DNA of 63,928 bases, counting the filler, from Hyphochytrium catenoides (lineage: Eukaryota > Protista > Hyphochytriomycota), in the NCBI GenBank assembly GCA_900088475.1. It is 10 parts of 10 records of this genome, joined end to end, with 100 filler letters (N's around TTAATTAATTAA, not from the genome) between each part and the next. Parts side by side here need not be neighbours in the genome. Positions count along the whole stretch, not along the records: positions 11,309 to 34,506 come from FLMG01003690.1; 9 more parts are not named here. One strand, written 5' to 3'. Every line of letters begins with the position of its first letter. The stretch's first letter is position 1. The notes beneath the pieces were generated by a model. That model saw only the letters and a program-made list of their open reading frames with translations, did not search any database and was not told where the DNA came from. The translations under genes and the position numbers were made by a program. Positions 9,631 to 34,506 of this stretch are shown here, in pieces.

Positions 9631-10795
9631 GTCCAGATGCCTCTTCTGTCCTCGTGGACTTATAGACTCCTATCTTGATCTTTATAGCCTCCTCTTGAGT
9701 GTCTTTCCTTCTCTCTTTCTTTCTTTTGCACTGGCCTTCTTACTATCTCATGTCTTATGCTCTTCTCCGTGTCTTTTCTTTGCAGGAGAGTGTATCTTGC
9801 TGTCCTGGTCAGAGGTTTGAAGACCGTTGCAAGGGCTCGGAAAGCTGAAGAATGGCGCCTGGCAATAGAGAGAAATCCTCGCTTTTCCAAAGCCCAAGAG
9901 CGTCAGGCGGCAAACTGACAAGAGAGCAAACCGCAAGAGAGAGAGAGAGACAAAGAGAGAGAACAAGAGAGAGAAAAAGGGATGCAAAGAAGATCACCAG
10001 ATTTAGAACACGTGAAAGAGACACTGAAGAGAGACTGACCAGAAGATGTTAATTATAGAGAGAGAGAGAGAAAGAGAGAGAGATAGGAAGAAAGATTAGG
10101 TAGAAAGAAGGAAGAAGAAAGTTCAAAGCTTCGACAGCGGAAGTAAAAATGCGTTGCCCGCACCGGCGTTGGAAGGTGAAGTCTATTCTCTGCTTTGCCG
10201 TCTGTTTGTTACCTGGCTGGCGGCGCCGTTTGAGCGGCCATTGGGATGGCGCCCGCTTTGTTCCTGGTCTCTCTCNNNNNNNNNNNNNNNNNNNNNNNNN
10301 NNNNNNNNNNNNNNNNNNNNNNNNNTCTCTTTATTTTTCTTCTTTGGTGCACTCTCTTCACCCTTGCACACTCGCCACCCTTCTCTCCTCCATATCTCCA
10401 GTATCAGTGACTTGCTCTAGACAGGCAGTCGTGTTAAGCTGCTGGTTCTATGGCTGACATGCATGTCAGTCACTCTCCTTCTCCTCCCACGTTCTTTCTC
10501 TCGTAAGTCGTTTTTAGCTTCTTAACGTTCCTCAGCTCCCATTGGTTCTTTCCTCTTCTGTCTTTCTTCTTCCACTCTCCTCTGTCGCAAACTTGTACCT
10601 CTCTCTCTTTCTCTTTCTCTCTCTTTCCCTTTCTCTCGATCTCCTCTATGCGCTGGCTCTCTCGACTACTGCTAATCTTGGTCCTTCCAAGCTTTTGTAT
10701 CTCTTTCCACTCTCGCTCTTCGTCATATACTCTATCTCTCTTCTCATANNNNNNNNNNNNNNNNNNNNNNNNNNNNNNNNNNNNNNNNNNNNNNN

Positions 10796-10826
<31 letters not shown>

Positions 10827-11208
10827 GGCCTCTCTCTTCGCTTGATATTCTGTGCTCAAGAAGAGGAAACTGCACTGGTCAAGGGACACACCGAAAGTGC
10901 TGGAAAAATAACGGACCACCGATCGAACTTATTTCAATGTTTCTTTCATGAGCTCATAGTTCCCTCACTCTTCTCACACTCTCAATGGCTCCGCCAATAC
11001 CTGGTAAAAGGGGGTTTTCGGAAGGAAGAGTGTGGGTTTGGATTGAAATTTATTAGGAGTTTAGGAAGCTTTCGTTGACGTTCGAAAGGTTCAGAACACG
11101 CTCTAACGCTTGGTGATGGACCTTTTGCTGTGCCCTTGATTGATCTCTCTGCTCCCTCCCTGCTCTGCCTCTCTCTCTCTCTCTCTTTTTCTCTCTCCCT
11201 CTCTCTCT

Positions 11209-11308
11209 NNNNNNNNNNNNNNNNNNNNNNNNNNNNNNNNNNNNNNNNNNNNTTAATTAATTAANNNNNNNNNNNNNNNNNNNNNNNNNNNNNNNNNNNN
11301 NNNNNNNN
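11209..11308. other. Artificial scaffold spacer N-TTAATTAATTAA-N (also at ~34507-34605, 51081-51180, 53155-53254, 55249-55348, 56769-56868, 57873-57972, 59800-59899, 62565-62664)
   Basis: The same 12-mer, with stops in all six frames, sits inside ~100-nt N blocks nine times. Confidence 0.97.
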
Positions 11309-11310
11309 TC

Positions 11311-13446
11311 ATGTTCCTGGAGGGCAGCGGACTTCCTCTTAATCGCCTTGCCAATCTCACGAGAGATACCCTGAGGATCGGAGGATATGCAGACGCCGAC
11401 CTGGGAAATCGGTTGGTGGTCACAGCGACCAAGACGAATATCTCCACCGCGGGAGGTGTGGGTGGCAACCCGAGGTCAATCGCCTACGAGACCAGAAATC
11501 TCAGTGGCTGCAGCCTGGACGCCTATAAAAGGAGCGTCAGGACCACGCTATTCGGCCGTACAGCAAGCATCATAGCCTACTGCCTCTCAGGAAAGGTGAC
11601 AACCGACTATGCAGCCGTCCGCTCGCACTTCCTTTCCTATTACACAGGGGGCAAAGGCGACACCCCGTACAAGATCAGCACGAATGACTACATTTCCATG
11701 GCTAACGAGGTGCCAGTGGTGGACATTGCAGGAAGCATGGCAACTGTTCCTTCCAGAGACTTCCGGCCTGGTGAGGAGGGCAGTCTGGACCTTGTCTCAG
11801 ACCAAGTCCTGCTGCAAGCTCTTTTGAAGACGTCAGACCGCTGTCACTTGCTTTTCTTCAATAAGAATGATGATGTGGCTACCGCTATCGCCAGCAATCG
11901 GCCGTTCTCGTACAGCAAGATCATCAACTCTGCCGGACTGGCGGAGTTCTCGTACGTGGCTGTGAGCGAGCTTTGCTACTGGGAGATGCAGAAGGAGCTG
12001 CGAGAGGGTTACGGACTGAGATATGAGCTTCGTCAGACGATTAGCACCTCCAGTGAGTCTATCGATGTGGCTCTCGGAGGCGATGTGGGTATCAGCTCTG
12101 GATATATTGCCGTGTACCTGTCGGGCCTCGTCATGGGCAGCCTGGTCATTTCCATCCTCATCAGCGTCAGGTACTACGCGCCACTGCTCAAGCGGCTGGT
12201 ACTTACCTTTGTAGCTTACCAAGAGAAAATAATGGAGTCCGATGCTGATGGAGAGGACAAAGAGAGACTCCAAGGAAAGAAGTGCAGGGTTGTTCTGAAA
12301 GAAGGGTACAGGTTGGAAGATATCTCTTCCACAGAGTATTTGCTCTATTTGTCGAATGCATCGGAGAGGATCCAATGTGAACTCCCAGCCTCTCTTCGCG
12401 TGGTAGCATGCATTCCTAACGTTGTCTACTTACTGATCAGCTCCCTGGGTGTGGAGTGTGAGTATCTGAGCCCGATGTTTGCTGTTACCTGCACTGACAA
12501 AGGCTTTGAGCGCACTCTATTCGACAATATGGACGTCCGCTCTATGTTAGCAGCTATCGGCATTGCGCTGTCTATCTCTGCCTCCGGGACCTTTGGTGTT
12601 CAATCCATGTCCACAAGATTGCGTCGGCTGCTGCACGCGCTAATCCTGGTCATTGGCGTCAGCTTCTCCTCTCTAGCTCTCAGTCGCTCAGGAGGTAGCA
12701 ATTCCCTTCTTCTAAGTTTCTTGCAAGCACAGATGCCCCTCGAGCTCTTAGCTGCTATCGTCCTCATCACAGCTGCCATTAAAGTCCACTTTGGCTCCGG
12801 AAAGGGATACTCTAGCGCTAGTCGGGCCAAGGGCGTGCTTTCAACCACTGTCAACGCTGGTCCGCGGCTGCACAGCACCCGGCAACTCCTAGATTTGGCC
12901 ACCCGGTTGCCTCAGATCCGAGTAGATGCGCGTTGGGTGCATGAGAACGAGGCTGTGTTGAGTGGACCTCTCGTTCTGGATCTTCTGGTTAGTTGGCTAG
13001 TGAGATGCGATCCTAGGCTACCTCTCTGTGAGCTGATCACCATCAGAAAAGATGGCACCTTAAGCTACATTTACTGCAGGCGGCTCTTGCCTTCCTCCTC
13101 CTATCAACCCACTACAAAGAGCTCGACAACAACTTTATTGCAGGCGATAGGAGGAGAAGAAAAAGGAGAGAAAGATAAGCAGGGCAGTGGTGTGCTCCTT
13201 GCCAGAGTGAGAGCCCAAGGCAGACTTGGAGCCAAGCTATTGGAGCTGACAGGGTTGGCGAAAACCCTCGAGACAGTTGCTATTGAAGTACCAGCAAACG
13301 AGAAATGGACCAAGAGGATGGTTGAGGAGGCAGAAGAAGAGAAGAGTAAATTTCTACCGCGAAGGGCAGGGGGCGCAAAGTTCCAGCTGTCCATCGGGGT
13401 GGCAGAGTTCTTCGCTCTTTGCCTCAACCAGAAGCGCTTTGCCTAG
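11311..13446 (+). CDS. Uncharacterised intronless multi-pass membrane protein (711 aa; 5' end may be truncated by scaffold edge)
   Basis: Long uninterrupted ORF: ~260-aa polar N-domain, TM-like GYIAVYLSGLVMGSLVISILISV, 3-4 further hydrophobic segments and a polar C-domain. No family recognised. Confidence 0.75.
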   Translation: MFLEGSGLPLNRLANLTRDTLRIGGYADADLGNRLVVTATKTNISTAGGVGGNPRSIAYETRNLSGCSLDAYKRSVRTTLFGRTASIIAYCLSGKVTTDYAAVRSHFLSYYTGGKGDTPYKISTNDYISMANEVPVVDIAGSMATVPSRDFRPGEEGSLDLVSDQVLLQALLKTSDRCHLLFFNKNDDVATAIASNRPFSYSKIINSAGLAEFSYVAVSELCYWEMQKELREGYGLRYELRQTISTSSESIDVALGGDVGISSGYIAVYLSGLVMGSLVISILISVRYYAPLLKRLVLTFVAYQEKIMESDADGEDKERLQGKKCRVVLKEGYRLEDISSTEYLLYLSNASERIQCELPASLRVVACIPNVVYLLISSLGVECEYLSPMFAVTCTDKGFERTLFDNMDVRSMLAAIGIALSISASGTFGVQSMSTRLRRLLHALILVIGVSFSSLALSRSGGSNSLLLSFLQAQMPLELLAAIVLITAAIKVHFGSGKGYSSASRAKGVLSTTVNAGPRLHSTRQLLDLATRLPQIRVDARWVHENEAVLSGPLVLDLLVSWLVRCDPRLPLCELITIRKDGTLSYIYCRRLLPSSSYQPTTKSSTTTLLQAIGGEEKGEKDKQGSGVLLARVRAQGRLGAKLLELTGLAKTLETVAIEVPANEKWTKRMVEEAEEEKSKFLPRRAGGAKFQLSIGVAEFFALCLNQKRFA

Positions 13447-14322: not shown

Positions 14323-16623
14323 CTATTCTCCCGACGAGTCTCTCGGCCGGCGATGGGCATTGCTCTCTCCTCCTCTCCAGTTCCGCATAGGGGCTTCATA
14401 AGAGACGGACGCGGTTATAAAGAACAGCCGACTAGGAGCTATGAGCTCCGTGTTGTTGGGTTGCTGACGAGGCGTTGGGTCTAAACCCACAATCCTTCGA
14501 TCGCTAGCTAAAAGAGAAGCCGATCCCGTTGACCTAGACGAAGTCAACATGAGATGATAGAGCAGAGGAAGAGAAAAGACGATGATAGAGGTCAGCCTTG
14601 CAACGATGAAGCTATCTGTCGTGATATCCAAGCCCGATCGCCCATCATGGTCGTTCTTTGCCGCCACCCCGTCCTCAAAGAGCTTTGTGACGCGCAAGAT
14701 AGTCCTAGAGCGGATGTAGAGGCCGCCGTCTTGAAAAATGACATCATAGAGGAACCAGGCTTGAGTAGCAAGCAGCGGAAGCAGGACAGCTGCACCTAGG
14801 AACGTTTTACTGACGAAGTGAGCACCAGGAAGATCTGGGCTGTTTCCTTGTCGAAAAGGTAGAATGGCGTCAGAGAAAAGGCAGCCAAGGAAGAGAAGAC
14901 ACCAGGCAAACAGCGCTAGACAGCGCTCATCGTATTGAAAGGCGTCCGAGAGGGAAAGAAAGAGGGCCACTACTTGGAGAAGAAGGAAAGAGAAGTCAAA
15001 GGAAGAGACACAGAGCAGCCTCAGTATGTGTACATTCCATAGCGTAGAGAGGTGACCGAACGTCACAGCATTCCAAAGAAGAGCGACTGTGGCAACGATA
15101 ATAGAGGGAGAGGACCACATCTCAGACTGGACTAGACAGGACCGTCTAAGCTTCCCAAGGATCAGAGCTGCAGGAATCGTCCACACCCCAAGAGCCATTA
15201 GCATCCGCATAGAGACGGGAGCCGTGGTTGTAGGGCGCTGCGCTCTTTTGCCACCAGACTTTGCAAAGGAAAACGGTGTCACCCGTTGTTGAAAGCTCTG
15301 TCTCCTCCCAATACAAGGTAGAAATTTGCTTAGTCGATCAACCATGACATAGTAAAGAGAGTGCTCAGCGTCCGGGTGACCAAAGGCTTGAGGCGTAGAG
15401 AAAAGGAGAGTCACGAGGTCTTTCTCCTGTGGCCTTGACGCTGGCAACTGGTTTTCGTTGACGTCCACAGCGCCTAGACTTAGGACCATATTACCCTGCT
15501 GACCAGCTGATGCTAACCCATGACGAGGTGATAGAGGGCAAAGAAGAAGCGGCCACTGCAAAGTTCGACACTGGACAACTCTCTTACTCCGAACAACACT
15601 GGTCTGTCGCCCGTCTTCCGCTCCACGCTTTCTCAGCCGACGGACAATGGATCGCCCTCCTTGAAGCACCCACGGGACGATATAGATTATGATAGTCAGT
15701 GCACAGTTGACGACGATGTCCTCTCCCGTTAGCTCTCTAGTCCCCAGAGGCCACCTAAGGACCTTCCCGCCTCTAAACACTTTGAAGACTATGCTTCCTG
15801 CGAGGATCGCATGGAAGATGAGCCCGATCAGATAGGACCAGAAGTTGGACGCACTGGACCTAAAGCCATAATGATAGCTATCTTTGAATGGCCCTGCCAA
15901 TATACATATCAGACCAGCTGCAGTGGAGAGAAAGAATCCACGGGTACCGCCCAACATAATGCCTGCTGTGCACCACATGGCGAAACCTAGCAGAATAATA
16001 GCCCAGAACTGGACATGAGGGACGGAACTTCTCAGCAGAGTGAGGTTGAGACACAAGACGATTTGTATGTTGGCCGGAAGAGCACCGATGAATGCATAGA
16101 CTGAGAGGTAAGTCCCAGCTTCATCGTCTGCAAGTAAGGCACAGCAGATGGCAATGAGTGCAGCATTGTAGAGCAAAAGAGAGACATCCACCACCTTCCT
16201 ATGTCGGCGTAAGCTGTTGAAGAATCTTTGGTGCCCATCTCGACCAAAGATGAGGCCTCATATAGAGTCATTGAAGTCCACGGTTGCTCCGCTTCCTCTT
16301 CCATCTCTATCTTTGATGGGGCTCAGAAGGGGAGTGAACTCCCAGCTTATTACGCTCTTTGGGCTTATGTCACTCAGCATTTTCTCTTCGGCTTTTACCT
16401 TGTCATTGGCATCCTCGGCTCCCCCGTTGGCATTCCTTTGTGTCTGGCTGTCGTTCTCCCTTCTCTGAGCTGTAGTGGCTACCAGATCTTTTCGGTCTGC
16501 TGCTCGCTGGTTGACTTCTTTGAAAGCTTCTTTGGCTGAGGGCTTGTGGGTCCGTTGTAAGAAGGTTTCTTGTTGCTCTCCGTCAGTCATCGGGGATCCC
16601 GGCAGCGATATTACTGGTGCCAT
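14323..16623 (-). pseudogene. Multi-pass membrane protein family, copy 1 (single in-frame TGA at 16258-16260; pseudogene or recoded)
   Basis: ORFs 16258-16623 and 14323-16194 are in the same frame. Read-through gives VDFNDSI*GLIFGRDGHQRFFNSLRRHRKVV, collinear with the paralogues. Shared motifs LTGED, QWPL, SFDF, YDERCL, TDSFIVAR. Confidence 0.8.
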
Positions 16624-18258
16624 CGTAGTGTTTCCGCCTGGACAGGGTTATCTTTGATGGATGCGCTTGTGCTCGCTCAGCTGTCGCCGACCCTTCCACG
16701 CAGACTGTAGGAGATCCCCCTTCTTCAACTGCAACGGAGCAGGCTCACGCGCGAGCACGTCATCCAATTCTGGAGAGTATTCGTGCACGAGACGCCTTCA
16801 TTGTCCTTTATGCTGAGACTCCTTCGCCCTGGAGCATTAGGATCTTTACCCCTTCTTTCATACCTCATATCACCTGCGGGAACACTCTTATCTTTCAAAC
16901 CATCTCATATCTGTTAACTGAGGGTTGATACCTTTCTTCTCTCTATGTGGGTTCAATATCTCCGCTTTGTTTCGTCAGCTCTCATATGTTCATCTTTTGC
17001 CCTCTTGCTCTCCGTTCACCCTTTCTCTCTCTATCTCTTCTTGTCTCATACTACTCTTCTTCGCATCTTTGTCTCCGCGCTTTCTCTACACCCTCGCTAG
17101 GTCTACTCGGTGCAGTCGCTACCAACCCAGGCCGACGATCAGCATCAACCCACCGGTCATGCCCCAGTCCTTTCCTTTCCTTCCCTCTCCACCCCTCCCT
17201 TTGTCCTCGTAGTCATCTTCTCTGCACTTGGTCGATGACAGCGGCGTGGCATGCACTCTCAATCCTCTTCTCCTCTTAGTAAGTAGGGGAGCAGATCTTC
17301 AAGCCAGTTCAAGGCCAAGCGGCAGGAGATGCAAGCAGTGCACTAACCATCCGGGCTGCTGAGGCAAGGTCTTGTAACGCGCCAACCCGTTGTAGAGATT
17401 CACTTGTCTATTGAATGGATAATAGCAGTACTTGTGACCAGAGGTGGTCCATATGAGAGACGGGTGAACCATACCCCTGTTCCTCACACAGGCGGTCCCC
17501 GTAGACAAGTTACCCCAAGACCTCTTCCCCCAATGAAACGCCTCCCAGAGCGACCTCCACAGTGGACCATGGGACGTTGTTGAGCCTCGATTAAGCTAAG
17601 ACTCCATTTGTAGAGGGTCAACACAATAAATTACAGGCCTATTACCGCTAACGGCCGGCACTACCGTTTCCTTGTCTTTGAGAGCCAAAATCAAGCTCTT
17701 TCTCCCGCTAAACTTTGTCACAGTGAAAGGAGGAGGCGGCAGCAGCTTGGTCGAGCCAGCGCGCGGCTGCCATCATCATCGATCGCTCATTAACTTCTTT
17801 ATGATCCCAACACGGTGATGATGATGGGAGAAGAGCGACGAGGGGTGGACGAAGAGGACGCGGAGGGAATGATTATCATGGTTACGGCGGGCAGCCTAGA
17901 CTAACAAACCAACTTCATCGCTCGCTCTCCTCGGCGTACCCTTAAGAGAACTGAGTCATTCCCGGTGACCGGATGTAGCGCAGAGAAGAGCACGCCGCCT
18001 GGCGTTATGTTAATTAACAGAAAGATATTTAGACTTCAAGGTAAGGCAAGTGGGTCCCCTCTTTAGAAGACTGGCACGGAAAGGTCTCGCACTCCTTGGT
18101 TCCGCAGCATAAGAGGTAGTCTCGTCTTCGCAGCAGCATAAGAGGTCCCTCCTCGTTTCTTCTAGCCGACAATAGCTCTATAATAATAAAGTGTCGTTCG
18201 GAGGTTGTCTAATGTAGCAACGACAATGACGCGTCCTACACTGTCAGCCAATAAGACC

Positions 18259-20706
18259 TCATGGTGGCTTTCGCACGGGAATCTCGTAAGAAACACGTGT
18301 TGTGAGGAAGAAAAGTTCTCTATCACGGCGTCTTCCTGTCCATTGCAAGGCAGTTGATGGTGTAGCTGGCAGGCACTTCCTCTTCCATAGATGATCTGCC
18401 CCTGAGGTTACCCTCACTTCTCTTTGCTTATGATGTGCCGCTTCTAGAGCATCGCCCCAAAGAGAAGGCGTCATTGAGAGAGATTGGGCCAGTAGATGGT
18501 GCAAGAGCGGTAGCGAGAAAAGAATGATTGAGACCTGTCTTGCCACGATGAAGCTGTCAACACTAAAGTCCAGGACTGTGGCCGCACCTAGTGACCTTGA
18601 TCCCTCCTTCCCTTCTTCCTGGATCGTCTCAACCACCCCTTCTTCGCGATGTTTGGTTATCTGCAGCACCGTTCGCGAGCGAAGGTAGTCACTACCTCGT
18701 CCGAAGGTCAAGTCGTAGAGAAAAGCACATTGAATTGCGAGCAACGGCAGCATCAACCCTAAGCCCTGGAAACGCTTAGTGATAGCCTTCTCACAATGAC
18801 GACGGACGCTGCCGTCTTCTTCTTCCTCTGGCAACACTGGAAGAATGCAGTCACTAAACAAACACGCCACGTATAAAAGACACCATGACAGAAGAATCAG
18901 ACAGCGCTCGTCATACTCGAAAGCGTCGCAGTATGAGAAGAAAAGCATGAATGCCTGAAACGTAAGAAACCAAAAGTCGAATGAAGAGCGGAGAACTAGG
19001 CGAAGAAGCTGCACATTCCAGACTCTGGAGAGATAGACGAAAGCAGCCAAATTCCAAAGCAACGTGGTGACTCCAATCACAATGGACAGCGAGGTGAGAG
19101 ACTCATGAGACATTGTCTTTCTCCTGTTCCCGATGATGTATCCAGCTGGGATCATGCACGCAGCACCGTAGAAGATCAAAACTCTGACCAGCACGATAAG
19201 CCACCCCTCGAAAGGTTCTCTTGTCTCCACCTTGTCCGCCTTTCTTCTGGGACCATCGGTCTCGACCGCAGGCGCAGCTGTACTTCCCTGTCCAACCGCA
19301 GCAGAAGGAGGAGCTTCTACATGGATCTTCTTTGGCTTTGCATGGGCCTTGCCTTCAGACTGAGAGTTCTTCCTGCGTAACCAGTCCGTCAGTCTCTTAA
19401 AGAGGACAGACCCAAGCGCTATGAACCGGTTATAGCAGAAGGAAAATAGATCCTCTCTTGGATGCAGCAGCCGCCGTGTCCTTGTGGGCCTTTCAAGGGT
19501 TAACCCCACGATAGCGTCCATTTGTGCTTCTCCTTCTCCACCAGCTCTACCTTCCTGCTGTTCCTTGAGGGCGGTCTGTACATCTCTTCTCGCTGGAACT
19601 TGAACCCTAGTAGTTCCATGTGGCTGACCTATCCCACCAACAGCAAACGACAACGCCGGCGGGACGCTGCAACAACTTCCTTTGCTGGTATCTACTACTA
19701 CTGATGCATCGTCAGCTATTTCAAGTGTAAGAGGCCACTGCATGCTGGAGCAGAATATCCTTCTAGTTAGCATTGCCCTCTTTTCTTCTGTCCTCTCCTC
19801 CCTCGGTGGCAGCGTTTGGGAAGAAGAAGGAGCTGTCTTGAGAGTAACTCTTCCACTACTTCCCCAGCGTTCGAAAGCCTTCCGTCTTCGAAGGATAGAT
19901 ATGCGGCTCGTGGCGATCAGATAAGGGATAAGGAAGAATATTGCTGTGCCCGCACAGTTGACGACTAAATCCTCTCCTGTTAGCTGACGGCTGCCGACGG
20001 TCCACCTTAGTACCCGACCACCACGAAAGACCTTCATTGATATACTAGCAGCCAACATTATATAGAGAAGGGTGGCGAAGAGGTAGCCCCAGAAACTTCC
20101 TGACGATTGCCTGGCACGGTAGTGGTTGCAATCCATCAGCGGGCCTCCCGTCACAGCGAGCAAGAGCCCAGCGCTGCAGAGAAATGTGCCACGTATACCT
20201 CCAAATGTCATCCCAACCGTCGTCCACAGCGCCAACAGAAGGAGGTGAGTTATCCAAAACTGGGCGCTCTGTGCTGACTTCTGGAGAAGCTTAGGATTGA
20301 TGCTCAAGAGTAGCTGCACGCTTCCTGGGAGGATACCCAGAGCTGCGAAGGCCGACAAATAGGTTCCTGTTGCCTCGCCCACGACTAGTGCAACAGTTAA
20401 TGCGCCAATAGCCAGATTGTAGGTAAGCAAGACAGTCTTGGCAATAAATCTGTGACGGCGGATGGCGCGAAAGTAGCGCTGATGCGCCTGTGGGCCGAAG
20501 AGATAACTCATAAACGACTCATTAAAGTCCACGACCACCGTCCCCAGCCTCCGGTCCTCCTCGTTCTCAAGAAGAGGAACCAACTGCCAAGCTCTGAGCT
20601 TTCTCTTAGAGGAGTCAGCCGCCAGATCCTCAGCTGGTTGAACGTCTTTTCTATTAGGAGTTTGTCTCTCAAACAAATGTCCAGGAGACGGCGAAGCGGG
20701 GGCCAT
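18259..20706 (-). CDS. Multi-pass membrane protein family, copy 2 (intact, intronless, 815 aa)
   Basis: About 10-12 hydrophobic segments in two blocks; motifs VDFNES, FRGGRVLRW, RQLTGED, QWPL, SSFDFWFL, CDAFEYDERCL, FSDCILP, DSFIVARQ, LFFLTTRVSYEIP. Confidence 0.9.
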   Translation of the reverse strand: MAPASPSPGHLFERQTPNRKDVQPAEDLAADSSKRKLRAWQLVPLLENEEDRRLGTVVVDFNESFMSYLFGPQAHQRYFRAIRRHRFIAKTVLLTYNLAIGALTVALVVGEATGTYLSAFAALGILPGSVQLLLSINPKLLQKSAQSAQFWITHLLLLALWTTVGMTFGGIRGTFLCSAGLLLAVTGGPLMDCNHYRARQSSGSFWGYLFATLLYIMLAASISMKVFRGGRVLRWTVGSRQLTGEDLVVNCAGTAIFFLIPYLIATSRISILRRRKAFERWGSSGRVTLKTAPSSSQTLPPREERTEEKRAMLTRRIFCSSMQWPLTLEIADDASVVVDTSKGSCCSVPPALSFAVGGIGQPHGTTRVQVPARRDVQTALKEQQEGRAGGEGEAQMDAIVGLTLERPTRTRRLLHPREDLFSFCYNRFIALGSVLFKRLTDWLRRKNSQSEGKAHAKPKKIHVEAPPSAAVGQGSTAAPAVETDGPRRKADKVETREPFEGWLIVLVRVLIFYGAACMIPAGYIIGNRRKTMSHESLTSLSIVIGVTTLLWNLAAFVYLSRVWNVQLLRLVLRSSFDFWFLTFQAFMLFFSYCDAFEYDERCLILLSWCLLYVACLFSDCILPVLPEEEEDGSVRRHCEKAITKRFQGLGLMLPLLAIQCAFLYDLTFGRGSDYLRSRTVLQITKHREEGVVETIQEEGKEGSRSLGAATVLDFSVDSFIVARQVSIILFSLPLLHHLLAQSLSMTPSLWGDALEAAHHKQREVRVTSGADHLWKRKCLPATPSTALQWTGRRRDRELFFLTTRVSYEIPVRKPP

Positions 20707-21591
20707 TTATTCCTCTTGGAGCGAGATTGGCTTGGAGAATGCTCTCACACACATTTCTTCTTCATCAGATGCAAATGTCGTTGACTTCAACAGCGGAACC
20801 GCCGTTAGATCAGAGCTGCTGCTTTGATCAGCTGCGGCCAGTTCAATGAGTTGACTGTCCTGGACAGGAGGAGCTTGTCATAGCTCTCCGCTGTGTTACT
20901 TTCCGCTTGACCAACAAGCTAGTTCCGCGCTGCGCGAGGAGAGAGGGAGGTCTCAGCTGCTAAGGCCCTGGCATCTGGGCTAAAAGCCCATCACCAGCCT
21001 GGCAATAATCAAACTCTTTTCCTCTTTTCTTCCCTAATGTTCTCCATCCCTTATGCAAGGTTTGTCAGCGTCCTGCATGTCTGCTTTCCTTCTCCTTTCT
21101 TCCTCCTGTCGTCCCAACCTCTTCCGATAGTTCATAGTTGTTGTCCGTGCCTGAGAGCATCAGGCGGATCAGGCGGAACTGTGTAGTTCTTTCCACCTCC
21201 TCCATGCCAAGGACCCGAAGTTCCTGGATTAGGAAGAGACAGAGCCGAGGACTATTGATAAGGACTGAAGGAGAGAAGAGGATGGTGACAAGAGGACGAG
21301 GGGCAGTTTGTAGAAGAGAGAGGAAGGGAAGAGAGAGAGTGAGGAGGAAGACAGAGGAGGGAGAGAGCACCAAGAAGAGAGAATAAGAGCGCGAGAGAGA
21401 GAATTTGGATTGGACGACTGGTGCGAAGAACGAGACAGTCAGATATGACATAGGGAAGGAGAGAGACGAGAGATGGAGAGAGAGCGACAGAGAGAGAGAG
21501 AGGAGAGAGGAGAGCAGTGAGTAGAGGAGAGAGAGGAGAGAGAGGAGAGAGGAGGAGAGAGGGATGGAGAGGGGGGAAGAGTGGGAGGAGA

Positions 21592-21630
<39 letters not shown>

Positions 21631-22463
21631 GAAAGAGAAGAAAAAAGAGAGAGAGAGAGAGAGAGAGATGAGAAAGAGAAGAAAAAAGAGAGAGAGAGAG
21701 AGAGAAAAGTATGGCGCTCGATCGTCCATCTTGTAACCGCCGACACTTTGAAACGCCTACAGTTCATAAGTGAGCTGTCCAAATATCGTCGCCTTCGGTA
21801 TCTATCAAGGCAACAAGCCACCCTAAACGTACAATCACCTGTTATGCGAAACCTGTCCTTGGATAGTCGTATTAAACATGTCACTGATAAGCGGAAATTC
21901 CAGAGAGACAGAGACCCAGAAAACTGATGACGAAGGTGACGTTATCTGCCGCCACGGACCTTGGGCTCCAGAGGAGGATGTTAGACTTGTGATGATGCCA
22001 CAGGACGACGGGCGCCGCAGCGACGGGCCGCCTGCCCTGTCGGTCGTGGAACTACTCCTCACTCACTGATGATCCAGCAAGCTGCCTTCGGTGAGCAGGA
22101 CTGAACAACACGGATCAGAGCATCGTGGATGACAGTTCAGTTGCTTTAATGTCTCTATTCGGATCTCACGACCTGCGCATCACAAGCAAACCTATCATGA
22201 ACATGATGAAAGAACGTCTGTTGTCTGTCTAGGAATGATGTTTCCGGCCTCGCGAATAGTGCTGCTAGTAGTGGGTCAACCCGTAGGCAGGTCTGCATGG
22301 CTGGCAGTATCATCATATGCCACTAAGAAACAGTGAGGACGTCAAGAAGGAGACGCCTTATTGATGAACATCTGCAGGCGTCCTTCTTGTTCTTCTTGGT
22401 CTCTGGCGCGGCGCGGCCAGGTTTGATTTGTTCTTGTCCCTTCTTTGATCTCTCCTGTCTGCG

Positions 22464-24670
22464 ATGAGTGACAGTGACAGTGGAAGGAAGGTGCTGCTGC
22501 CTATGACCACCAGGGCATCTCATGACCCCCAAGAAGGGTACAAGAATGGAAGCTTGATCTGGGAAATTCTGCCGCTATGGGACACTTTGGAAGACCAGCA
22601 GCAAGATCAGATGACCATAGACTTCGGCCGCTCTGTTTGTGCTCTCATCTTCGGCCAGCAAACCCATCGAAGCTTCTTGCACGCGCTTAGGCGCCATAGA
22701 AGCCTAGTTAGACTTTCCTCCGTTGCGTTCTTCGCAGCTCAGGTGGCTGCCTCAGCGGCTTTAGTCGTTGGGCAGTCTACGGGAGAGACACTGGCCATCT
22801 TCTCTGTTGTTGGTGCAGTTCCGGCAATCCTGCAGATAGTTCTGGGTCTGAATGTGACACTTCTGCGCAAAGTAGCAGGAAATCCTCAGCTCTGGCTCAT
22901 TATCATCCTCCCCATTGCTCTCTGGGCCACAGTTGGTGTCATGGTGGGCGGTACTCGCGGCACATTCATCTCAATATCTGGGTGCTTGATCTCAATAAGC
23001 TCTGTTCCAGTGAATGATAGCTACCATTATCGGTTTAGGTTTGTTGGCCTTCTCTTCTGGGGATAGTTCCTCGCCTCCGTCAACTTTGCCATGCTGGGCG
23101 TCAGCATGGTTTTGAAGCTCTTCAATGGCGGCAGGACAATACGATGGGCTCTGGGTTCCAGAGAACTGACCGGGGAAGATATCGTCTTGAACTGTGCAGC
23201 CACAGCCATTATCTGCACTCTGCCTCCGCTCATACCCGGCTTTCGGACTCTATGGCGGCGGTTCGTTACAAGAAGCAGATTACGAGGCACAACGCTTGCA
23301 GCTGCAGCTGCGGCAGTGATGCCGCAGGAAAAGGCAGCATGCTCGGAGCGCAGCAGAAGGGCGAAGATGATCCTTTGCTCAACCATCAATTGGCCTCTTG
23401 TACTCTTACCGAGGGACGGGGAAGAACAGGCACCTCCAATAGATAATACAAGGATAGAAGGAGCAAGTCCTCTCACTTATCGTGGAGAGCTAGCACCGTT
23501 GATAGTACAGGTGCCCAGGAACATGCCCACCCTACTGGCACAGGACACTGTCTTCTTACTTCTGAAACGTGTGCTTCAGCAAGTAAAGCCATGCATCTTC
23601 AGTTTTGTCAACCATAAAGAGCAAAAGAGACTATTATCAAGCCATGAGCCTACTAAAGGCAAAAAGGAAGGCGAGGAGATCATTCGTCCAGTTCGAAGGT
23701 AGGAGGCCAGAGGCTTACGCCGGGACGACCTGTGGAGAGGCTCATGGTACATGTTGGACTATTTATGGGAGTGGTGCTGATCTTTGTAGCCAACCATGTT
23801 ACCCTGGCTCGAAGGGAAGCATCATCTTTGGGTCAGGCCTCAGACTCCTACCGCATTCCATCTCTTCTGCTTTCTATGGTTACCACGGTGTGGTGTCTAG
23901 CATCTGTTCTTTACCTGTCATCTCTATGGAACTGTCAACTCGTCCAGCTCCTGTTGAAGAGGTCTTTCGACCTATGGCCTCTGCTTTGTCAAGCAGCTAC
24001 ACTTCTTGTCGCACTTTGTGATGCCTTCGAGTACGACGAACGTTGTCTTCACCTGATTTCCTGGAGCCTTTTGTACGCAGCGTCTCTCTTTAGTGATGCC
24101 ATCCTTCCGTCTGTTGGTCAACAGGGGAGCGGACCATGGATAGTAGTTTCCAAGCAGGCTCTCGGAGGAGGAGCAGTTCTTCTTCCGCTCTTGGCCTTCC
24201 AATCCTGGTTTCTGTATGGACTCTTCTTCAAACAAGATGCCTTATACCTAAGACCAAGGACAATCCTGCGGATTACCAAGTATCTAGAAGATGATGGAGG
24301 GGTGCATAGGGAAGCCTCAGCTCAAGTGTCCAGCAGTAACCTTGATCTCAGCACTGACAGCTTCATAGTAGGACGACTGACTTCCATTATAGTCTTTTCT
24401 CTTCCTCTTCTGTACCATCTGCTTTTCTCGTCTTCTTCTCTCCTTGGTTCTTCTGGGTGTCATTGATCACAGCTTAAGAACGGCCCCAGCAACGTCGTTG
24501 GGAGTCTGCCTGAAGGTCGATTGCTCTTCTTCCTTACAGGCTCTGTGGCTTACGAAATCCCTACACGGAAGACCAAAATGAAGATCATCGTCGGAGAAGA
24601 GGCAACCAAACAGCAGAGAAGAGACAATGTACACGCGACGCATCAAGTGGTGCGTGATACTTTGGATTGA
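22464..24670 (+). pseudogene. Multi-pass membrane protein family, copy 3 (inverted; two nonsense codons plus one frameshift)
   Basis: TAG at 23064-23066 replaces the Tyr of FWxY; frameshift between ~23657 and 23700; TGA at 24464-24466 is followed in frame by the conserved LLFFLTGSVAYEIP; final stop at 24668-24670. Confidence 0.88.
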
Positions 24671-25031
24671 GGACAAGGCTGCTGGCATTTAGTAATGTCT
24701 ATGATGACAAATTGTAGGAGGAAAACAGCAGTCCCGAACAAGCGGCCACCCGTCGCCTGCTGTGGCAGCAGAGGCAAGCTTTATTAGCAGCACACTATTG
24801 AACTCCTTCCTTCTAAGCCTCCGCGAATGGTTCATTGATCGTCGCTGTTTGAAGCCACGGACAAGAAGCCACCTGCCAGCGCTTCCTCCTCCGCAGTCAA
24901 GGAAGAAAAGGTTCCCTTCTCAGTCCCTCTTACCCTAATAGGCGTCGTTCATCGCAATGTGAAACAGCTTTAGCAGTCCCAGCAAAGAACAAGAAAAAAA
25001 CGGAATCTGTCCACCGTTGCTTTGCTTGATT

Positions 25032-27653
25032 TTACTCAGAACCTTGCATAAGAAGTGGTTGGGCAGGCACATCGTAGCATGTGGCCCCAGTAAGGAAGTA
25101 TAATGGTCTGTCTCCTCCCCCTCCTTGGCCCAGCCTTTGCTGCGCTGTCGATGACAATAAGGCAGAGGTGGGCGGAGCACGGAAGACAGAAGAGCAGGCA
25201 ACGACCAGATGATATAGAAGAGGAAGAGAGAAAAGGATGATTGTGGTCTGCCTGGCAACGATGAAGCTATCTGTGCTGATGTCTAGGATCGTGATAGCAG
25301 GCTCATATTTTGGATCTTCGTCTCCTTCTAACTTGCCGACCACCACCCCATCTTCCAAGTACTTGGTAATCTGCATCACTGTCCGGACTCTCATATGCAG
25401 ACCACTGTCCATGAAAACCAGGACGTAGAGTAACCAGGATAGCGTAGCAAGAAGAGGAACAAGCATCGCCAGCCCAATAAACTGCTTTGTGATGATGGTA
25501 GTAGCCGGCTTCCCTCCCTTCTCTCCTCCCGGTAATGCAGGCAGAACAGCATCACTGAAGAGACAAGCATCATACAGAAGGGTCCATGACAAAAGGACCA
25601 GGCAGCGCTCATCGTACTCAAACGCGTCGCACAGCGCGATAAACAGGGCCCAGGTCTGAAGCCAGAGAAACCAAAAGTCAAAGGAAGTGCACATTAAGAG
25701 CCGCAACAGGTGCAAGTTCCAGCTCTTGGCCAGAAGGAGAAGGGACATGAGGCTCCACAGTAGCGTTCCTGTGGCTACTATCGGAGAGAGCCAGGAAAGA
25801 AGAGAAGAGTTTGGTGAGCCTCTCCTCCGATTTCCTAGGTACAACCCTAAGGGGATCATGCAGGCCACCCCGCAAAAGAGAAAAGTGCGCAGCACCAGAA
25901 GACGCCACTCTGGTCTCCCGTACTCGTCTCTCTGCCGGTCGGCCGTTGGACCTGTTGCTTCCCCTTGGCCTGGCTCCTTGATATAACTCGATCTCTCTTC
26001 TTCCTCTTCTGTGAAGGAGAAGTGTTCTTCCTTCTCTCTCCTGTTGTTCTCGTGCGCTTGGATCTTTATTGGTCTTCCTCCTGGGTACGACCTACCCTTG
26101 ACTGCTCTTGTCCTCGCATTTGCATCATCTTCTTTTCTTTTTTGTCTTGTCGCGCTGGAGAGTTTCGTCCAAGCGGCGACCACTCTAGTAAAGCATGAGT
26201 AATAGAGGTTGTCGTCCGCGTGTAACTGCATACGTTGAGGATAGGAGAGAGCGAGGGGAATGATAGGGAAGCGCAACCCATCGACCCTCTGCTGTGCACT
26301 CCCTAACACTGTGGACACGACAGAGGCGATGTTACAGGACACGGGGCTCTTATTATTAGAAGCAGCGGAGCCACCAATTGAAGAAGAAGTGACTGAGTCC
26401 GGAAGGGAGGGAGGCTCTGGGACAGCTTGAGAAGCAGATGGCGCTGTTGGTGGCGGAGAAGAAGAAGAAGCACCCTTCTTTAGCTTTTGCTCCTGACAGC
26501 AGGCTCGCCTTCGTCGTGTAAGCTCTAACACCAGGGGCCACTGGATACTAGGACATTCATACCTCCGCATGGTTATAGCGCTATGGTCCGTACTAGCACC
26601 GGCACATCTCTTCTTCTCGTCTCCTCCTCCCCCCCCTATCGCCTCTATAGTCAGAGCTCTACGTTTTGGAAGCTGCTTTTTCCTATGTCGTTCTTCCACT
26701 TGCCTCCAAATGGTCCTTGAGTAAGATGAGAGGCTGGGAAAGAGGAATAGCACAAGGGTAGCAGCACAGTTGACCACAAAATCCTCACCCGTCAGCTGCC
26801 GGGAGCCAATAGTCCATCGTAACACCGTCCCACCCCGGAAGACCTTAAGCACCATGCTGGCCGCGAGCAAGGAGTAGAGTATTACCGCGAAGAAATACGC
26901 CCAAAAAGAGCTTGAGGGACGTCGGAAGCGGTAGTGATTACAGTCTCTTACCGGGCCGCCAGTCAAAGCCTGCAGCACTCCCGTGGAAGAAAGGAGTATG
27001 CCTCGAACGCCGCCCAGCATCACAGCGACAATAACCCAGAGTATAAGCAACACACAGTGAAGTGCCCAGAACTGGGCTGAGATTGCCGCCTTCCTCAATA
27101 AAGAGGGATTAATGCTCAGGATTAGCTGTCCCAGGCCCGGAAGAACTCCAAAAGCCGCACAGACGGATAAGTAGGCTCCAGGAGCCTCCCCGACCACCAG
27201 CGCAGCTGCTAGAGAGCCGATGGCGAGGTTGTAGGACACAACAGTCACAAGCACGATCTTTCTGTGCTTCTTAAGCAGTCTAAAGTACGCTGTATGCCCT
27301 CTAGGGCCGAAGAGGCGTGCACATATTGAGTCATTGAAGTCCACCAGCAGTGATCCCAGGCGTTCTTCTTCCTCCGTTTCCCATAGAGGGACTATCGTCC
27401 AGCAATATTCATCCGTCTCATGTCTCTCTAGCTTTTGAGTCGACTCCTCTCTTCCCGATCCTCCCATCTCCTCTCCCTTCAGCCCTACCCTTTCAGGTTT
27501 TTCGCGCAATGCGTTCGGGCTTGTTGAGGACAGCACCACAGGCTTATTTAGAAGGCTAGCAGATGTAATATGAGCCATGGTAAGCCGTGCTACGGAGAAT
27601 GTGTGCTCCCTTACTATCCGTAAAGCCTGATGCGGTGTTGCCGCAGACCCCAA
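25032..27653 (-). CDS. Multi-pass membrane protein family, copy 4 (intact, intronless, up to 873 aa)
   Basis: Same motif series as copies 1-3 (VDFNDSIC, RQLTGED, CPSIQWPL, SFDFWFL, CDAFEYDERCL, TDSFIVARQ, LYFLTGATCYDVP). The true start is probably a downstream ATG. Confidence 0.9.
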   Translation of the reverse strand: MGSAATPHQALRIVREHTFSVARLTMAHITSASLLNKPVVLSSTSPNALREKPERVGLKGEEMGGSGREESTQKLERHETDEYCWTIVPLWETEEEERLGSLLVDFNDSICARLFGPRGHTAYFRLLKKHRKIVLVTVVSYNLAIGSLAAALVVGEAPGAYLSVCAAFGVLPGLGQLILSINPSLLRKAAISAQFWALHCVLLILWVIVAVMLGGVRGILLSSTGVLQALTGGPVRDCNHYRFRRPSSSFWAYFFAVILYSLLAASMVLKVFRGGTVLRWTIGSRQLTGEDFVVNCAATLVLFLFPSLSSYSRTIWRQVEERHRKKQLPKRRALTIEAIGGGGGDEKKRCAGASTDHSAITMRRYECPSIQWPLVLELTRRRRACCQEQKLKKGASSSSPPPTAPSASQAVPEPPSLPDSVTSSSIGGSAASNNKSPVSCNIASVVSTVLGSAQQRVDGLRFPIIPLALSYPQRMQLHADDNLYYSCFTRVVAAWTKLSSATRQKRKEDDANARTRAVKGRSYPGGRPIKIQAHENNRREKEEHFSFTEEEEERSSYIKEPGQGEATGPTADRQRDEYGRPEWRLLVLRTFLFCGVACMIPLGLYLGNRRRGSPNSSLLSWLSPIVATGTLLWSLMSLLLLAKSWNLHLLRLLMCTSFDFWFLWLQTWALFIALCDAFEYDERCLVLLSWTLLYDACLFSDAVLPALPGGEKGGKPATTIITKQFIGLAMLVPLLATLSWLLYVLVFMDSGLHMRVRTVMQITKYLEDGVVVGKLEGDEDPKYEPAITILDISTDSFIVARQTTIILFSLPLLYHLVVACSSVFRAPPTSALLSSTAQQRLGQGGGGDRPLYFLTGATCYDVPAQPLLMQGSE

Positions 27654-28887: not shown

Positions 28888-31800
28888 ATGGACAGAAGGC
28901 AGGCCCGAAGTACCGCTCCGCGATATGCGGGAGCGTTTCGATCGCCTGCTGCCTCGTCGTCCACTGGCTTCTCCCGAAGCTCTATTCTTTTGCTCATCGG
29001 CGCGCTAAACCTATTTGGATTCCTCCTACTGGTCAGAACAACGCAGCTCGTGCTCTCTTTGCCCTACCTTCCTTTATTTCAGGACTACGTCGTATTATGT
29101 GTGATGCTTCTCAAACGCACGAACTCCAAATTGCCGCCTTACCCTCCCTCTTTCCTACTTTTCACCTTTCCTCTAGCTGAGCTCCACCAAGCCTCTCTTA
29201 CTGGTCCTTAGATCTAGAGCCTTATCGGTCCTCCAATCTCACTTTGACTGTTAGAGCTCGTACAAGATGGGGTCGAAGCACGATTCAACGTCGTTTTTTC
29301 GAGGGTCCGACCTTACCAGCACCAGCGGGGTACTCACAGATGCTGAGAAGAAGAGCAATATCAGGGTTCAGACACGTTCACCTAAGTCAGCAGCGTCTCC
29401 CAGGTCCACCTCACCATCTAGCACAATCCCTCCGGCTTCTTCTCCTGGTGCTGCGCCTTTGAATGCCAAACAGCTGAGTGTGCGAGAAGCTATGCGCTGG
29501 GCGTGGAACGAGGGCTATGCAAAATATGCCTGGGGAGAGGATATCTTTCTTCCTCTTTCCAAGCAGGGCGGGCGATGGAACGGTTATAACATTGGCTTGA
29601 GTATCTTGGACTCTCTCGATACCCTCTTCTTGCTTGGAATGCAAGAAGAATATCAAAGAGCTCGCGATTGGTGTAAGAACCAACTATCGTTTGAGGTGGA
29701 TGTCTACGTAAACCTCTTTGAGACATCTATAAGGGCACTCGGCGGGCTACTCAGTATATATGCCCTCACCGGTGGGACGCAGCTTCTTATCTTCTTTCTC
29801 TTATACCTTCTTCCCCCTCTCACTCCTCGACCTTTCTTTTTCGCTACAAAGCCTCACTCCATTCTAACGCTCACGTGAGCTATTCACTCCTCCTAATCTG
29901 CTCGTCTGTCTTTGAACAGGTGAAAAAGTCTTTCTTGACCGCGCTGATGACTTGGGCGAACGACTAACGAAAGCGTTCACTTCTTCTAGTCTCATTCCAT
30001 ACTCTGACGTGAATTTGAAGGTAAGATGATGGTGAGAGAGGCCATTCCATGCTTTGTTGAAGCGGAGACGACTTCTACTGGTGTGGGGTGTCTTTCCTAC
30101 AAACTCATTGAAGCACTACTCTATATGCCTCTAGCGGGTCCCCACTTTTGCTAGCTCTTTGTCGAACTCGGCTAGCTCACGAGTACGCTACACATGTCCT
30201 GATTATGTTGTCCCAGACCGGAGAAGCCAAGTCTCCGGATTTTTCTGCGTACAGCTCTACGTCTGAGGTTTCGACCATCCAGCTAGAGTTTCAGTACTTG
30301 AGTAGACTGACGGGGAAGGATAAATACAGGCAGCTTGTGGACAAGACGTCAGATGCGGTAAGCAGCACCAAGCCAACCTTTCTTGACTCCATTTCCACCC
30401 TCCCACGGTACCTGCTAGGTCTTTCAAGTGGGTTGTTGCCTTCCTGAAAAGCTTTCCTCTAACCTGGAAGCAGCATTCAGCTCATCCGTCAGTCAGCTCA
30501 GTATTCTACACGGGCTCTGGGCCACGTTAGCTGCCTCTCTGTTATTCAAACTAGAGGGTCTCTTGTATCTAGTCTTAAGGTTCTTATGGACTTGTTGCAT
30601 ATAGCTAGCAGCCCTCCCCAAGACTGATGGACTGGTCCCTGTACTAATCAGCCCCGAAAGTGGGAAGTAAGTGTCTAGAACCGGAATTGGGAATGCTTAG
30701 ACTATTTGACAATAGCGAGGCGGAGATAGTCTGTAAAGCTAGCTAGGTAGTGGTCGACTTATGAGCAGCTTTGTAAAACCGAGATGTGAGCCTAGGGCAC
30801 CTAACCGTCTTAGCTGACCCTTTCCTTTCTTCTCAGGTTTGATACGTCTAGTATGATCACCCTAGGAGCGAGAGGTGACAGCTATTATGAATATCTTCTA
30901 AAGCAGGTACGAAAACCTCTCTCGCTTATGACTCCTGTCCCTGTCACTGCTCTGCCTTTCTCTGTTTTATTGCCAAGTGTGTCTCTGTTGCAGTTTAGCC
31001 TTTACTCGTTCTGCACTAATGTTCACTTGATAACGTGTGACAGTGGCTTCTTGGCGGCAAGCGGGAGGATAAACACAAAGAACGCTATTTGGATGCCATG
31101 AAAGGTCGGTCTTAGTCCTGTCCTTCTCTAACCCAAGATTGTTGATGGAACAATAGTTGTAGCGCTGGTAAATCCCCTTTATTTGCCCATCGCGACCTCC
31201 TCTTCAGACATCTCTCTTACTTGTTAGATACTAACTTCCTTCCCAACGATGTTTCTCTACCGCAAGGACTCATTCTATGCCGTCCTTCTTTTCCCATCAC
31301 ATTGTGGGGTTTGTCTAGTGCTAGTGCCGCATGATCTCCCTACCGCCAACACATGCAACCTTCTTGTTCTAAAGTGCGATTTGCCACTTGCTCTCTCGAC
31401 CACTTTGCAGGGGTTATGAACCGGCTCCTGAAAAAGAGCAAAGGCTCTCGTGCGCTTGTGTACATCGCGGAGCTCTCTCCTAAAGGAGAGGTGAGGAACA
31501 AGATGGATCATCTGGTATGCTTCATGCCCGGGCTACTGGCTCTCGGACACTATCATGGGCTTAAGGAACATGGCCACCTGGAGGCAGCTCGGGAACTCAT
31601 GTACACCTGTTACCAGGTGATTAGTATAGTCTTACCCTTCTTTCCCTCAATGTCCTACATTTACGACTCGCCTTCGCTTTGTTTTGTCAGTCTAAGCTTG
31701 TTCTCTCTTTTGTTTCTTTCTTGTGTTTGCTTAGCCTGCTGCTAGACTCGTACTCACCTTGTCTGTGCTCATGCTTCCTGCATAGATGTACAAGGCAACT

Positions 31801-34192: not shown

Positions 34193-34471
34193 CTTGGGCC
34201 AAGCTTCTTGGTCTTGCTCTATGGTAAAGTCGCGCTGTAGCTTAGCGTATAGACTTTATCGTGTCTCTACTCTTTCCGTCTCTCTCGATCAACACTTCGA
34301 AGTGCGGAAGGGTAACTGGAGCTGTGAGGATCTGTAGGCGTGCCGATAGGTCGGTAAATGAGATCTGAAAAGACAGAAACATAGCTGGTATCGCTGGAGG
34401 AACATGATAGAAGATGAGTTCTATGTCTCTTGAGAGAGAGAGAGAGAAAGATAGAGAGCAGGGAGAGAGAG

Positions 34472-34506
<35 letters not shown>

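What the first reader, a model, noticed from the sequence alone, without database searches (positions are those of the whole stretch)
14323..27653. Tandem array of four intronless paralogues of an uncharacterised large multi-pass membrane protein
Seen: four ~730-870 aa paralogues (orientation -,-,+,-) share an ordered motif set (W..PL, VDFN.S...FG...H, D..HY, FRGG..LRW..G.R.LTGED..VNCA, C...QWPL, WN..LL, SFDF, DAF.YDERCL, FSD..LP, R.RT...ITK, DSFIV.R, FSLPLL.HL, L.F.T....Y..P) separated by highly variable low-complexity loops. I cannot assign a named family; from memory the C-half resembles unannotated expanded 'putative transmembrane proteins' of oomycetes, which needs checking. Inference: intronless, tandemly expanded, divergent membrane genes with pseudogenised members show the birth-and-death pattern of chemoreceptor or ion-channel repertoires. 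This is the best candidate for an undescribed system in the window.
Basis: partly seen in the sequence, partly recalled or inferred. Interest (0 to 1): 0.8.

Follow-up and report, generated by a model that had tools for sequence, protein, structure and literature searches.

The report
Tandem orphan twelve-helix membrane protein genes
Four neighbouring intronless genes (two intact, two broken) encode an unnamed membrane protein family, also found in oomycetes, built from two copies of a six-helix unit; its predicted shape is closest, though only weakly, to animal otopetrin proton channels.

Summary
Four paralogues lie at 14323-27653 in orientation -,-,+,-. Copies c2 (815 aa) and c4 (848 aa from the first ATG) are intact single ORFs. 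Copy c1 has one nonsense codon, also present in contigs of two DNA runs. Copy c3 has three nonsense codons and a frameshift.

The family has no Pfam, PDB-sequence or literature match. An exhaustive search of 1.84 billion representative proteins gave seven weak relatives, one of which links to a Pythium insidiosum hypothetical protein. The best AlphaFold DB fold matches are unnamed transmembrane proteins.

New here: the protein is an internal duplication of a 6-TM unit (hhalign 96%, E 2e-9; reversed and shuffled controls fail). This gives 12 TM helices, a disordered central loop, and conserved charged residues in TM4, 6, 9, 10 and 12.

My reading is a lineage-restricted channel or transporter-type family evolving by tandem birth and death. 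Expression and function are untested. The chemoreceptor idea is not supported by the anatomy.

The parts
14323..16380 (-). Copy c1: 685 codons, full set of family motifs, one premature stop
   Evidence: Translation; family HMM E 2e-108
16258..16260 (-). In-frame stop codon in c1, directly after the DFNDSI motif and before TM1
   Evidence: Contigs of DNA runs X1 (15925-16302) and X2 (15983-16302) cover it, and no difference is listed there
18259..20706 (-). Copy c2: intact 815-aa ORF; the protein that was modelled
   Evidence: AF2 model pTM 0.68. Allelic indels inside it are 3 nt long (18804, 19820)
19897..20451 (-). c2 N domain, TM1-TM6 (residues 86-270), with a conserved hairpin between TM5 and TM6 (FRGG..LRW..G.R.LTGED)
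   Evidence: Model helices. Family-wide conserved P127, W151, R172, D192, D246, N250, T254
19213..19896 (-). c2 central loop (residues 271-498): low-complexity and mostly disordered, rich in K and R. It starts with the conserved strand C...QWPL
   Evidence: pLDDT below 50 over most of it; 39 K+R; pN 0.52-0.63 against 0.31-0.38 in the core
18472..19212 (-). c2 C domain, TM7-TM12 (residues 499-745), homologous to the N domain
   Evidence: hhalign of N half against C half: 95.8-96.2%, E 7e-9 and 2e-9, with controls. Conserved D577, Q584, D594, R601, D619, R678, R723
18277..18321 (-). c2 C-terminal strand motif L.F.T....YE.P. In the model it pairs with the strand at the start of the central loop
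   Evidence: Strands 314-330 and 796-810; L798 and Y807 invariant
22464..24667 (+). Copy c3: pseudogene with stops at 23064-66, 23700-02 and 24464-66, and a frame change between 23657 and 23702
25032..27578 (-). Copy c4: intact ORF, 848 aa from the first ATG
21459..21705 (.). (GA)n microsatellite in the head-to-head spacer between c2 and c3
   Evidence: skew

Best explanation
The locus is a tandem cluster of an unnamed, lineage-restricted family of polytopic membrane proteins.

Shown:
- Each protein is an internal duplication of a six-helix unit, giving 12 TM helices in an N domain and a C domain with the same membrane orientation.
- Each domain ends in TM5, a short conserved hairpin, then TM6.
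- The two domains are joined by a long, disordered, fast-evolving loop.
- In the model, a conserved strand at the start of that loop pairs with the conserved C-terminal strand.
- Relatives exist in oomycetes and in a few unnamed protists. At least one of those genomes also carries them in a cluster.
- Two of the four copies here are intact, and two were disabled recently.

Inferred:
- Because each unit has an even number of helices and the central loop is K/R-rich, the N terminus, the central loop and the C terminus are cytosolic, and the conserved hairpins face outward.
- The family-invariant charged and polar residues lie inside or at the ends of TM4, TM6, TM9, TM10 and TM12: R172, D192, the D246-N250-T254 stripe, D577, Q584, D594, R601, D619 and R723. 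They most likely line one hydrophilic pathway per six-helix bundle.
- The protein would therefore work as an ion channel or facilitator with an otopetrin-like layout (two vestibules per subunit, probably dimeric).
- The repertoire turns over by tandem duplication and pseudogenisation.
For: - Paralogy and lesions.
- The c1 stop is present in contigs of two DNA runs, and the two indels listed inside c2 are multiples of 3 nt, whereas indels in the spacer are 1-4 nt.
- Core pN is 0.31-0.38 against 0.52-0.63 in the loop.
- Family relatives: (7 hits in 1.84 billion), full-length collinear alignment, oomycete link, and AFDB clusters at E 1e-17 to 4e-12 with TM by hit up to 0.73.
- Three paralogues lie on one other contig.
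- Internal duplication: score 64-68, against 17-20 for reversed and 8-15 for shuffled profiles. Each half-HMM also cross-hits the other half.
- The 12-TM models have pTM 0.68 and 0.75.
- Published otopetrin layout: 12 TM in two similar 6-TM domains on a pseudo-two-fold axis, with a polar vestibule in each (10.1101/542308).
Against: - Otopetrins are absent from the Swiss-Prot fold search, which returns only MFS proteins at TM about 0.15.
- There is no sequence signal to Pfam Otopetrin or to PDB otopetrin chains.
- The otopetrin Q-N-Y triads are not recognisable.
- The models rest on shallow alignments of 15-17 rows.
- No RNA run could be listed, so expression is unknown.
- Synonymous sites are saturated, so dN/dS cannot be estimated.
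- The listed c2 polymorphisms are 11 nonsynonymous to 6 synonymous, which suggests only modest constraint.
Confidence: 0.45

Rival explanations
1. It is a true, very remote homologue of otopetrins and conducts protons. This would be a protist and oomycete branch of the OTOP superfamily.
For: Otopetrins from four species and three paralogue classes are consistently the best full-length structural matches with two aligners and two models. Both share a 6+6 parallel pseudo-repeat and cytosolic termini.
Confidence: 0.2
2. It is a chemoreceptor-like or ligand-sensing receptor repertoire, diversifying to recognise varied ligands.
For: The tandem array shows birth and death, with two pseudogenes and variable regions. 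The N half weakly matches AFDB entries auto-named DUF4203 and THH1/TOM1/TOM3, which are 7TM-type (ranks 6 and 15).
Confidence: 0.12
3. It is a very divergent two-repeat member of the voltage-gated-like (6-TM Ion_trans) superfamily, comparable to two-pore channels. The TM5-TM6 loop (..LTGED..) would act as a pore loop.
For: The layout is 2 x 6 TM. One AFDB family member (K3WJ54) is auto-named 'Ion transport domain-containing protein'. From memory, the LTGED motif recalls the calcium-channel filter. Weak partial hits to HCN, MloK1 and NaV appear.
Confidence: 0.06
4. It is an MFS-type or other secondary transporter with the usual 6+6 layout.
For: 12 TM in two homologous halves. MFS proteins fill the Foldseek lists at E of about 0.006-0.8.
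Against: TM-scores to MFS are only 0.11-0.19. None survives the VIA re-rank above otopetrins. No MFS Pfam hit.
Confidence: 0.05
5. It is a membrane scaffold or organelle-shaping protein with no transport role, or a decaying gene family of little current function in this genome.
For: Half of the copies are broken. No RNA evidence could be obtained. The nonsynonymous share among the listed c2 variants is high.
Against: Motifs are conserved between this genome and oomycetes. Invariant charged residues lie in TM helices. The two indels listed inside c2 keep the reading frame.
Confidence: 0.12

Closest known systems
Unnamed oomycete and protist transmembrane proteins (Pythium insidiosum PINS_up004782 = P0009; UniParc UPI00043F1472 = P0007; AFDB clusters A0A2D4C5A0, A0A5D6XGM1, A0A662X8M0, K3WJ54, A0A5D6YL66)
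   Same: Collinear N and C domains, the same signature (N..LL...SFDF.F..Q......D.F..D.R; D at the end of TM4 and TM10; R.R hairpin; C-terminal L.F......Y), and the same predicted fold (Foldseek E 1e-17 to 4e-12, TM by hit 0.58-0.73 for the four full-length hits of about 500-740 aa). Paralogues are clustered on a contig (L002).
   Different: The window's copies are 20-25% identical to them and carry a much longer low-complexity central loop (about 230 aa against about 60 aa) and longer tails. None of these relatives has a name, a Pfam family or a known function.
Otopetrin proton channels (OTOP1-3, CeOtop8; Pfam PF03189)
   Same: 12 TM helices in two structurally similar six-helix domains of the same orientation, cytosolic termini, and polar or charged residues inside each bundle. 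They are the only solved structures that align over both halves (270-360 residues).
Major facilitator superfamily
   Same: 12 TM as 6+6 with an internal duplication.
   Different: TM-scores are about 0.15, there is no Pfam match, and there is no 3+3 inverted sub-repeat signal.
Tandemly expanded receptor or channel repertoires (for example insect Or/Gr, nematode srh)
   Same: Genomic behaviour: intronless tandem paralogues, old divergence and recent pseudogenes.
   Different: Different helix number and fold. The variable regions are cytosolic and disordered rather than ligand-facing.

Membership tests
Unnamed oomycete/protist 12-TM family | Full-length collinear sequence homology including the C-half signature SFDF.F..Q......D.F..D.R | tested here: met
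   phmmer E 2e-14 to 5e-4 against full-length members; alignment A1; window profile against the Pythium insidiosum protein, 93%, E 3e-7
Unnamed oomycete/protist 12-TM family | Same predicted fold | tested here: met
   Foldseek against AFDB clusters: E 1.4e-17 to 4e-12, TM by hit 0.58-0.73 for the four full-length entries of about 500-740 aa among the top five
Otopetrin (PF03189) | [quoted passage not shown] | tested here: met
   AF2 models; N half against C half hhalign E 2e-9 with controls; definition taken from 10.1101/542308
Otopetrin (PF03189) | Sequence or profile match to the Otopetrin domain or to solved otopetrin chains | tested here: not met
   No Pfam hit at E up to 1 for 7 members. 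Whole-length and half-domain profiles do not hit any PDB otopetrin at E up to 10
Otopetrin (PF03189) | Structural superposition clearly above generic helical-bundle background | tested here: inconclusive
Otopetrin (PF03189) | Conserved Gln-Asn-Tyr triad in each domain | tested here: inconclusive
   The family-invariant polar residues are D192, D246/N250/T254, D577/Q584/D594, R601, D619 and R723. No conserved TM tyrosine was found and no residue-level superposition was available
Otopetrin (PF03189) | Proton-selective conductance | not testable with these tools
   Needs electrophysiology
Major facilitator superfamily | MFS fold (TM-score 0.5 or more) or an MFS Pfam domain | tested here: not met
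   TM 0.11-0.19; no Pfam hit
Voltage-gated-like ion channels (Ion_trans, two-pore channels) | PF00520 match and an S4 helix with spaced basic residues | tested here: not met
7TM chemoreceptors / GPCR-like | Seven-helix unit with a matching fold | tested here: not met

The most novel reading that the evidence does not exclude
The family is the first otopetrin-fold channel lineage outside animals: a protist and oomycete 6+6 TM proton or cation channel, carried in tandem, rapidly turning-over arrays. [quoted passage not shown]
Probability: 0.2. Interest if true: 0.8.

Novelty: new variant of a known kind. Interest (0 to 1): 0.55.

Why it matters
The family has no Pfam model, no solved relative and no literature, yet it is conserved between this genome and oomycetes, a group that includes major plant and animal pathogens.

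Recognising the internal 6+6 duplication, the invariant charged residues in the helices and the otopetrin-like layout turns a set of 'hypothetical transmembrane proteins' into a testable channel or transporter hypothesis.

If the otopetrin link is real, it would push the origin of that proton-channel fold far beyond animals. If it is not, this is a new 12-TM fold family that merits a Pfam entry and a structure.

Tried and rejected
- K-mer homology searches with c2 and with a 7-sequence alignment found nothing.
With the window-only alignment it found no relative.
- Pfam on all members, PDB sequence profiles (whole and by half), and the ESM Atlas by features and by shape were all blank or at noise level.
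- No RNA runs were listed, so expression could not be tested.
- dN/dS could not be computed: synonymous sites are saturated (pS 0.77-0.88), so only pN contrasts are reported.
- The 711-aa ORF at 11311-13446 was tested as a possible fifth, divergent copy and rejected (no HMM hit).
- Intron explanations for the c3 and c1 stops were rejected, because no splice-like context removes them.
- DNA self-comparison shows no flank homology that would define a duplication unit.
- The organism could not be identified. Run labels are coded, and the SRR accessions of the related contigs appear in no paper.
- A hint from an SAC1-like permease on related contig L001 is not decisive.
- The MFS, VGIC and GPCR readings were considered and set aside; see the rival explanations.
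Full report
**What is there**

The piece (11309-34506, GC about 51%) carries four paralogous genes in orientation -,-,+,-.

- c2 (18259-20706) is an uninterrupted ORF of 815 aa.
- c4 (25032-27578 from the first ATG) is an uninterrupted ORF of 848 aa. It is 40% identical to c2 over the full length (E 2e-173).
- c1 (14323-16380) has the complete motif set but one in-frame stop at 16258-16260, just after the N-terminal DFN.S motif.
- c3 (22464 to about 24667) has three in-frame stops (23064-66, 23700-02, 24464-66) and one frame change between 23657 and 23702.

A family HMM run over the six-frame translation finds exactly these four copies. It does not match the neighbouring 711-aa ORF.

**Are the lesions and the genes real?**

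Contigs of two DNA runs of the same organism (dated 2011 and 2017) cover the c1 stop, and no difference is listed there. It is therefore not a one-off assembly error, although these runs may be the data the assembly came from.

The same runs show allelic variation. The two indels listed inside c2 are both 3 nt long (18804, 19820). Those in the c1-c2 spacer are 1, 2, 3 and 4 nt. This fits selection for an open frame in c2.

Synonymous sites among the four copies are saturated (pS 0.77-0.88), so dN/dS cannot be computed. Nonsynonymous divergence is 0.31-0.38 in the helical core against 0.52-0.63 in the central loop. The two broken copies are as conserved in the core as the intact ones, so they were disabled recently.

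The duplications are old. DNA-level similarity survives only in the most conserved motifs.

The neighbouring GH47 mannosidase gene is split into at least six exons, and the DSBA-like gene into at least two. The intronless state of the family therefore contrasts with its surroundings.

**Relatives**

- Pfam gives nothing, nor do PDB sequences.
- K-mer searches of 5.8 billion proteins give nothing.
- An exhaustive phmmer search of 1.84 billion cluster representatives returns only seven proteins.
 - Two are pieces of one gene on a Logan contig (L001; 47% identity over the best-matching stretch).
 - Five are full-length proteins of 528-895 aa at 20-25% identity.
- These align collinearly over both halves and the C-terminal motif.
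- One of them (P0007, a UniParc entry) leads to a Pythium insidiosum hypothetical protein. That protein matches the window's profile at the SFDF..Q..CD..D.R signature (93%, E 3e-7).
- The c2 model's best AlphaFold DB cluster hits are unnamed 'Uncharacterized' or 'Transmembrane' proteins. Foldseek E is 1e-17 to 4e-12, and TM by hit is 0.58-0.73 for the four full-length hits of about 500-740 aa.
 - From memory of the accession series, these are oomycete entries; the tool hid the organisms.
- A GC-rich contig (L002) carries three paralogues within 12 kb, so clustering is a family trait.

**Anatomy**

The AF2 models of c2 (pTM 0.68) and of the compact relative P0003 (pTM 0.75) both show twelve TM helices as 6+6. 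Each half ends in TM5, a short beta hairpin, then TM6.

In the N half the hairpin is FRGG..LRW..G.R.LTGED. In the C half it is R.RT...ITK ... DSFIV.R.

A strand at the start of the central loop (C...QWPL) pairs with the C-terminal strand (L.F.T....YE.P).

Profile-profile comparison shows that the two halves are homologous. Two independent alignments give 95.8% and 96.2% probability, E 7e-9 and 2e-9, over 144-189 columns. The score is 64-68, against 17-20 for reversed and 8-15 for column-shuffled controls. Each half-HMM also weakly detects the other half in three copies.

An even helix number per unit gives parallel repeats. The central loop has 39 K+R and is mostly disordered. I therefore infer that the N terminus, the loop and the C terminus are cytosolic and that the conserved hairpins face outward.

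Family-wide invariant or near-invariant residues are P127, W151, R172, D192, D246, N250, T254, W502, F576, D577, F580, Q584, D594, R601, D619, R678, R723, L798 and Y807 in c2 numbering. Many are charged residues inside or at the ends of TM4, TM6, TM9, TM10 and TM12.

**Comparison with solved folds**

Foldseek against the PDB finds nothing significant for c2.

For the compact P0003 model:

- The best Foldseek PDB hit is zebrafish OTOP1, with E 0.039, probability 0.97 and TM 0.31 by query and 0.40 by target. MFS hits reach only about 0.15.
- Other high rows are short four-helix bundles (LRRC8, connexin).

Otopetrins are described as 12-TM subunits. They have two structurally similar six-helix domains on a pseudo-two-fold axis, with a polar vestibule in each (10.1101/542308). 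They are also described as lacking structural similarity to other channels and as conserved among animals (PMC9348849).

The resemblance is consistent but weak:

- There is no sequence signal.
- The Q-N-Y triads are not recognisable.
- The Swiss-Prot fold search lists only MFS proteins at TM about 0.15.

I found no paper linking otopetrins to oomycetes or protists.

**Interpretation**

Securely shown: this is a tandem, intronless cluster of an uncharacterised 12-TM family with two intact and two recently broken copies. The protein arose by internal duplication of a 6-TM unit, and the family is shared with oomycetes and a few unnamed protists.

Inferred at about 45%: the protein is a channel or facilitator with one hydrophilic path per six-helix bundle, lined by the invariant Asp, Asn, Thr, Gln and Arg residues, in an otopetrin-like arrangement. 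True otopetrin homology gets about 20%.

The chemoreceptor analogy fits the genomic turnover but not the anatomy. The variable parts are disordered and predicted cytosolic, the outward loops are conserved, and the unit has six helices.

VGIC-like and MFS readings fail their membership tests. Expression is untested, because no RNA run could be listed.

**Verdict**

Novelty: an unnamed family whose architecture is newly defined here, possibly a non-animal variant of the otopetrin kind. Interest is moderate (0.55), rising to about 0.8 if the otopetrin or proton-channel link is proven.

Noticed in passing
window 11311-13446 (+): A 711-aa ORF that starts at the piece's edge. It has several hydrophobic segments, no Pfam match and no match to the family HMM. 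It may be another orphan membrane protein next to the array.
   Followed up: partly
window 29267-32352 (+): A glycosyl hydrolase family 47 (alpha-mannosidase) gene split into at least six exons, collinear with Pfam positions 1-455. Introns are roughly 40-400 nt. This shows the genome is intron-rich, unlike the four family genes.
   Followed up: partly
window 33008-33930 (-): A DSBA-like thioredoxin-fold gene in at least two exons (Pfam positions 13-98 and 100-169).
   Followed up: no
window 21459-21705 and 34432-34506: Long (GA)n microsatellites. The first sits in the head-to-head spacer between c2 and c3, and its antisense frame gives a spurious 210-aa 'SLSLSL' ORF (21252-21884).
   Followed up: no
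window 15900-20800: Contigs from two DNA runs differ from the window and from each other at many sites (for example 15 differences in 278 nt at 17060-17337, with both forms in one run). This suggests two divergent haplotypes or strains.
   Followed up: partly
L002:14-1666(-), 2960-4806(+), 10001-11866(+): A GC-rich (64%) Logan contig from another organism carries three paralogues of the same family within 12 kb. The middle one is split into two ORFs 14 nt apart (frameshift or tiny intron).
   Followed up: partly
L001:8989-11075 (+): The closest relative of the window's family (47% identity in the C half) is itself split over three frames on its contig, so it is broken or contains introns. It sits next to SAC1-like (CitMHS) and ZIP transporter genes.
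   Followed up: partly
window 14552-14628, 24344-24420, 25207-25283: The TM12 motif (DSFIV.R..SII.FSLPLL.HL) keeps 78-84% nucleotide identity between c1, c3 and c4, although synonymous sites are saturated elsewhere. Possible causes are local gene conversion or strong codon-level constraint.
   Followed up: no
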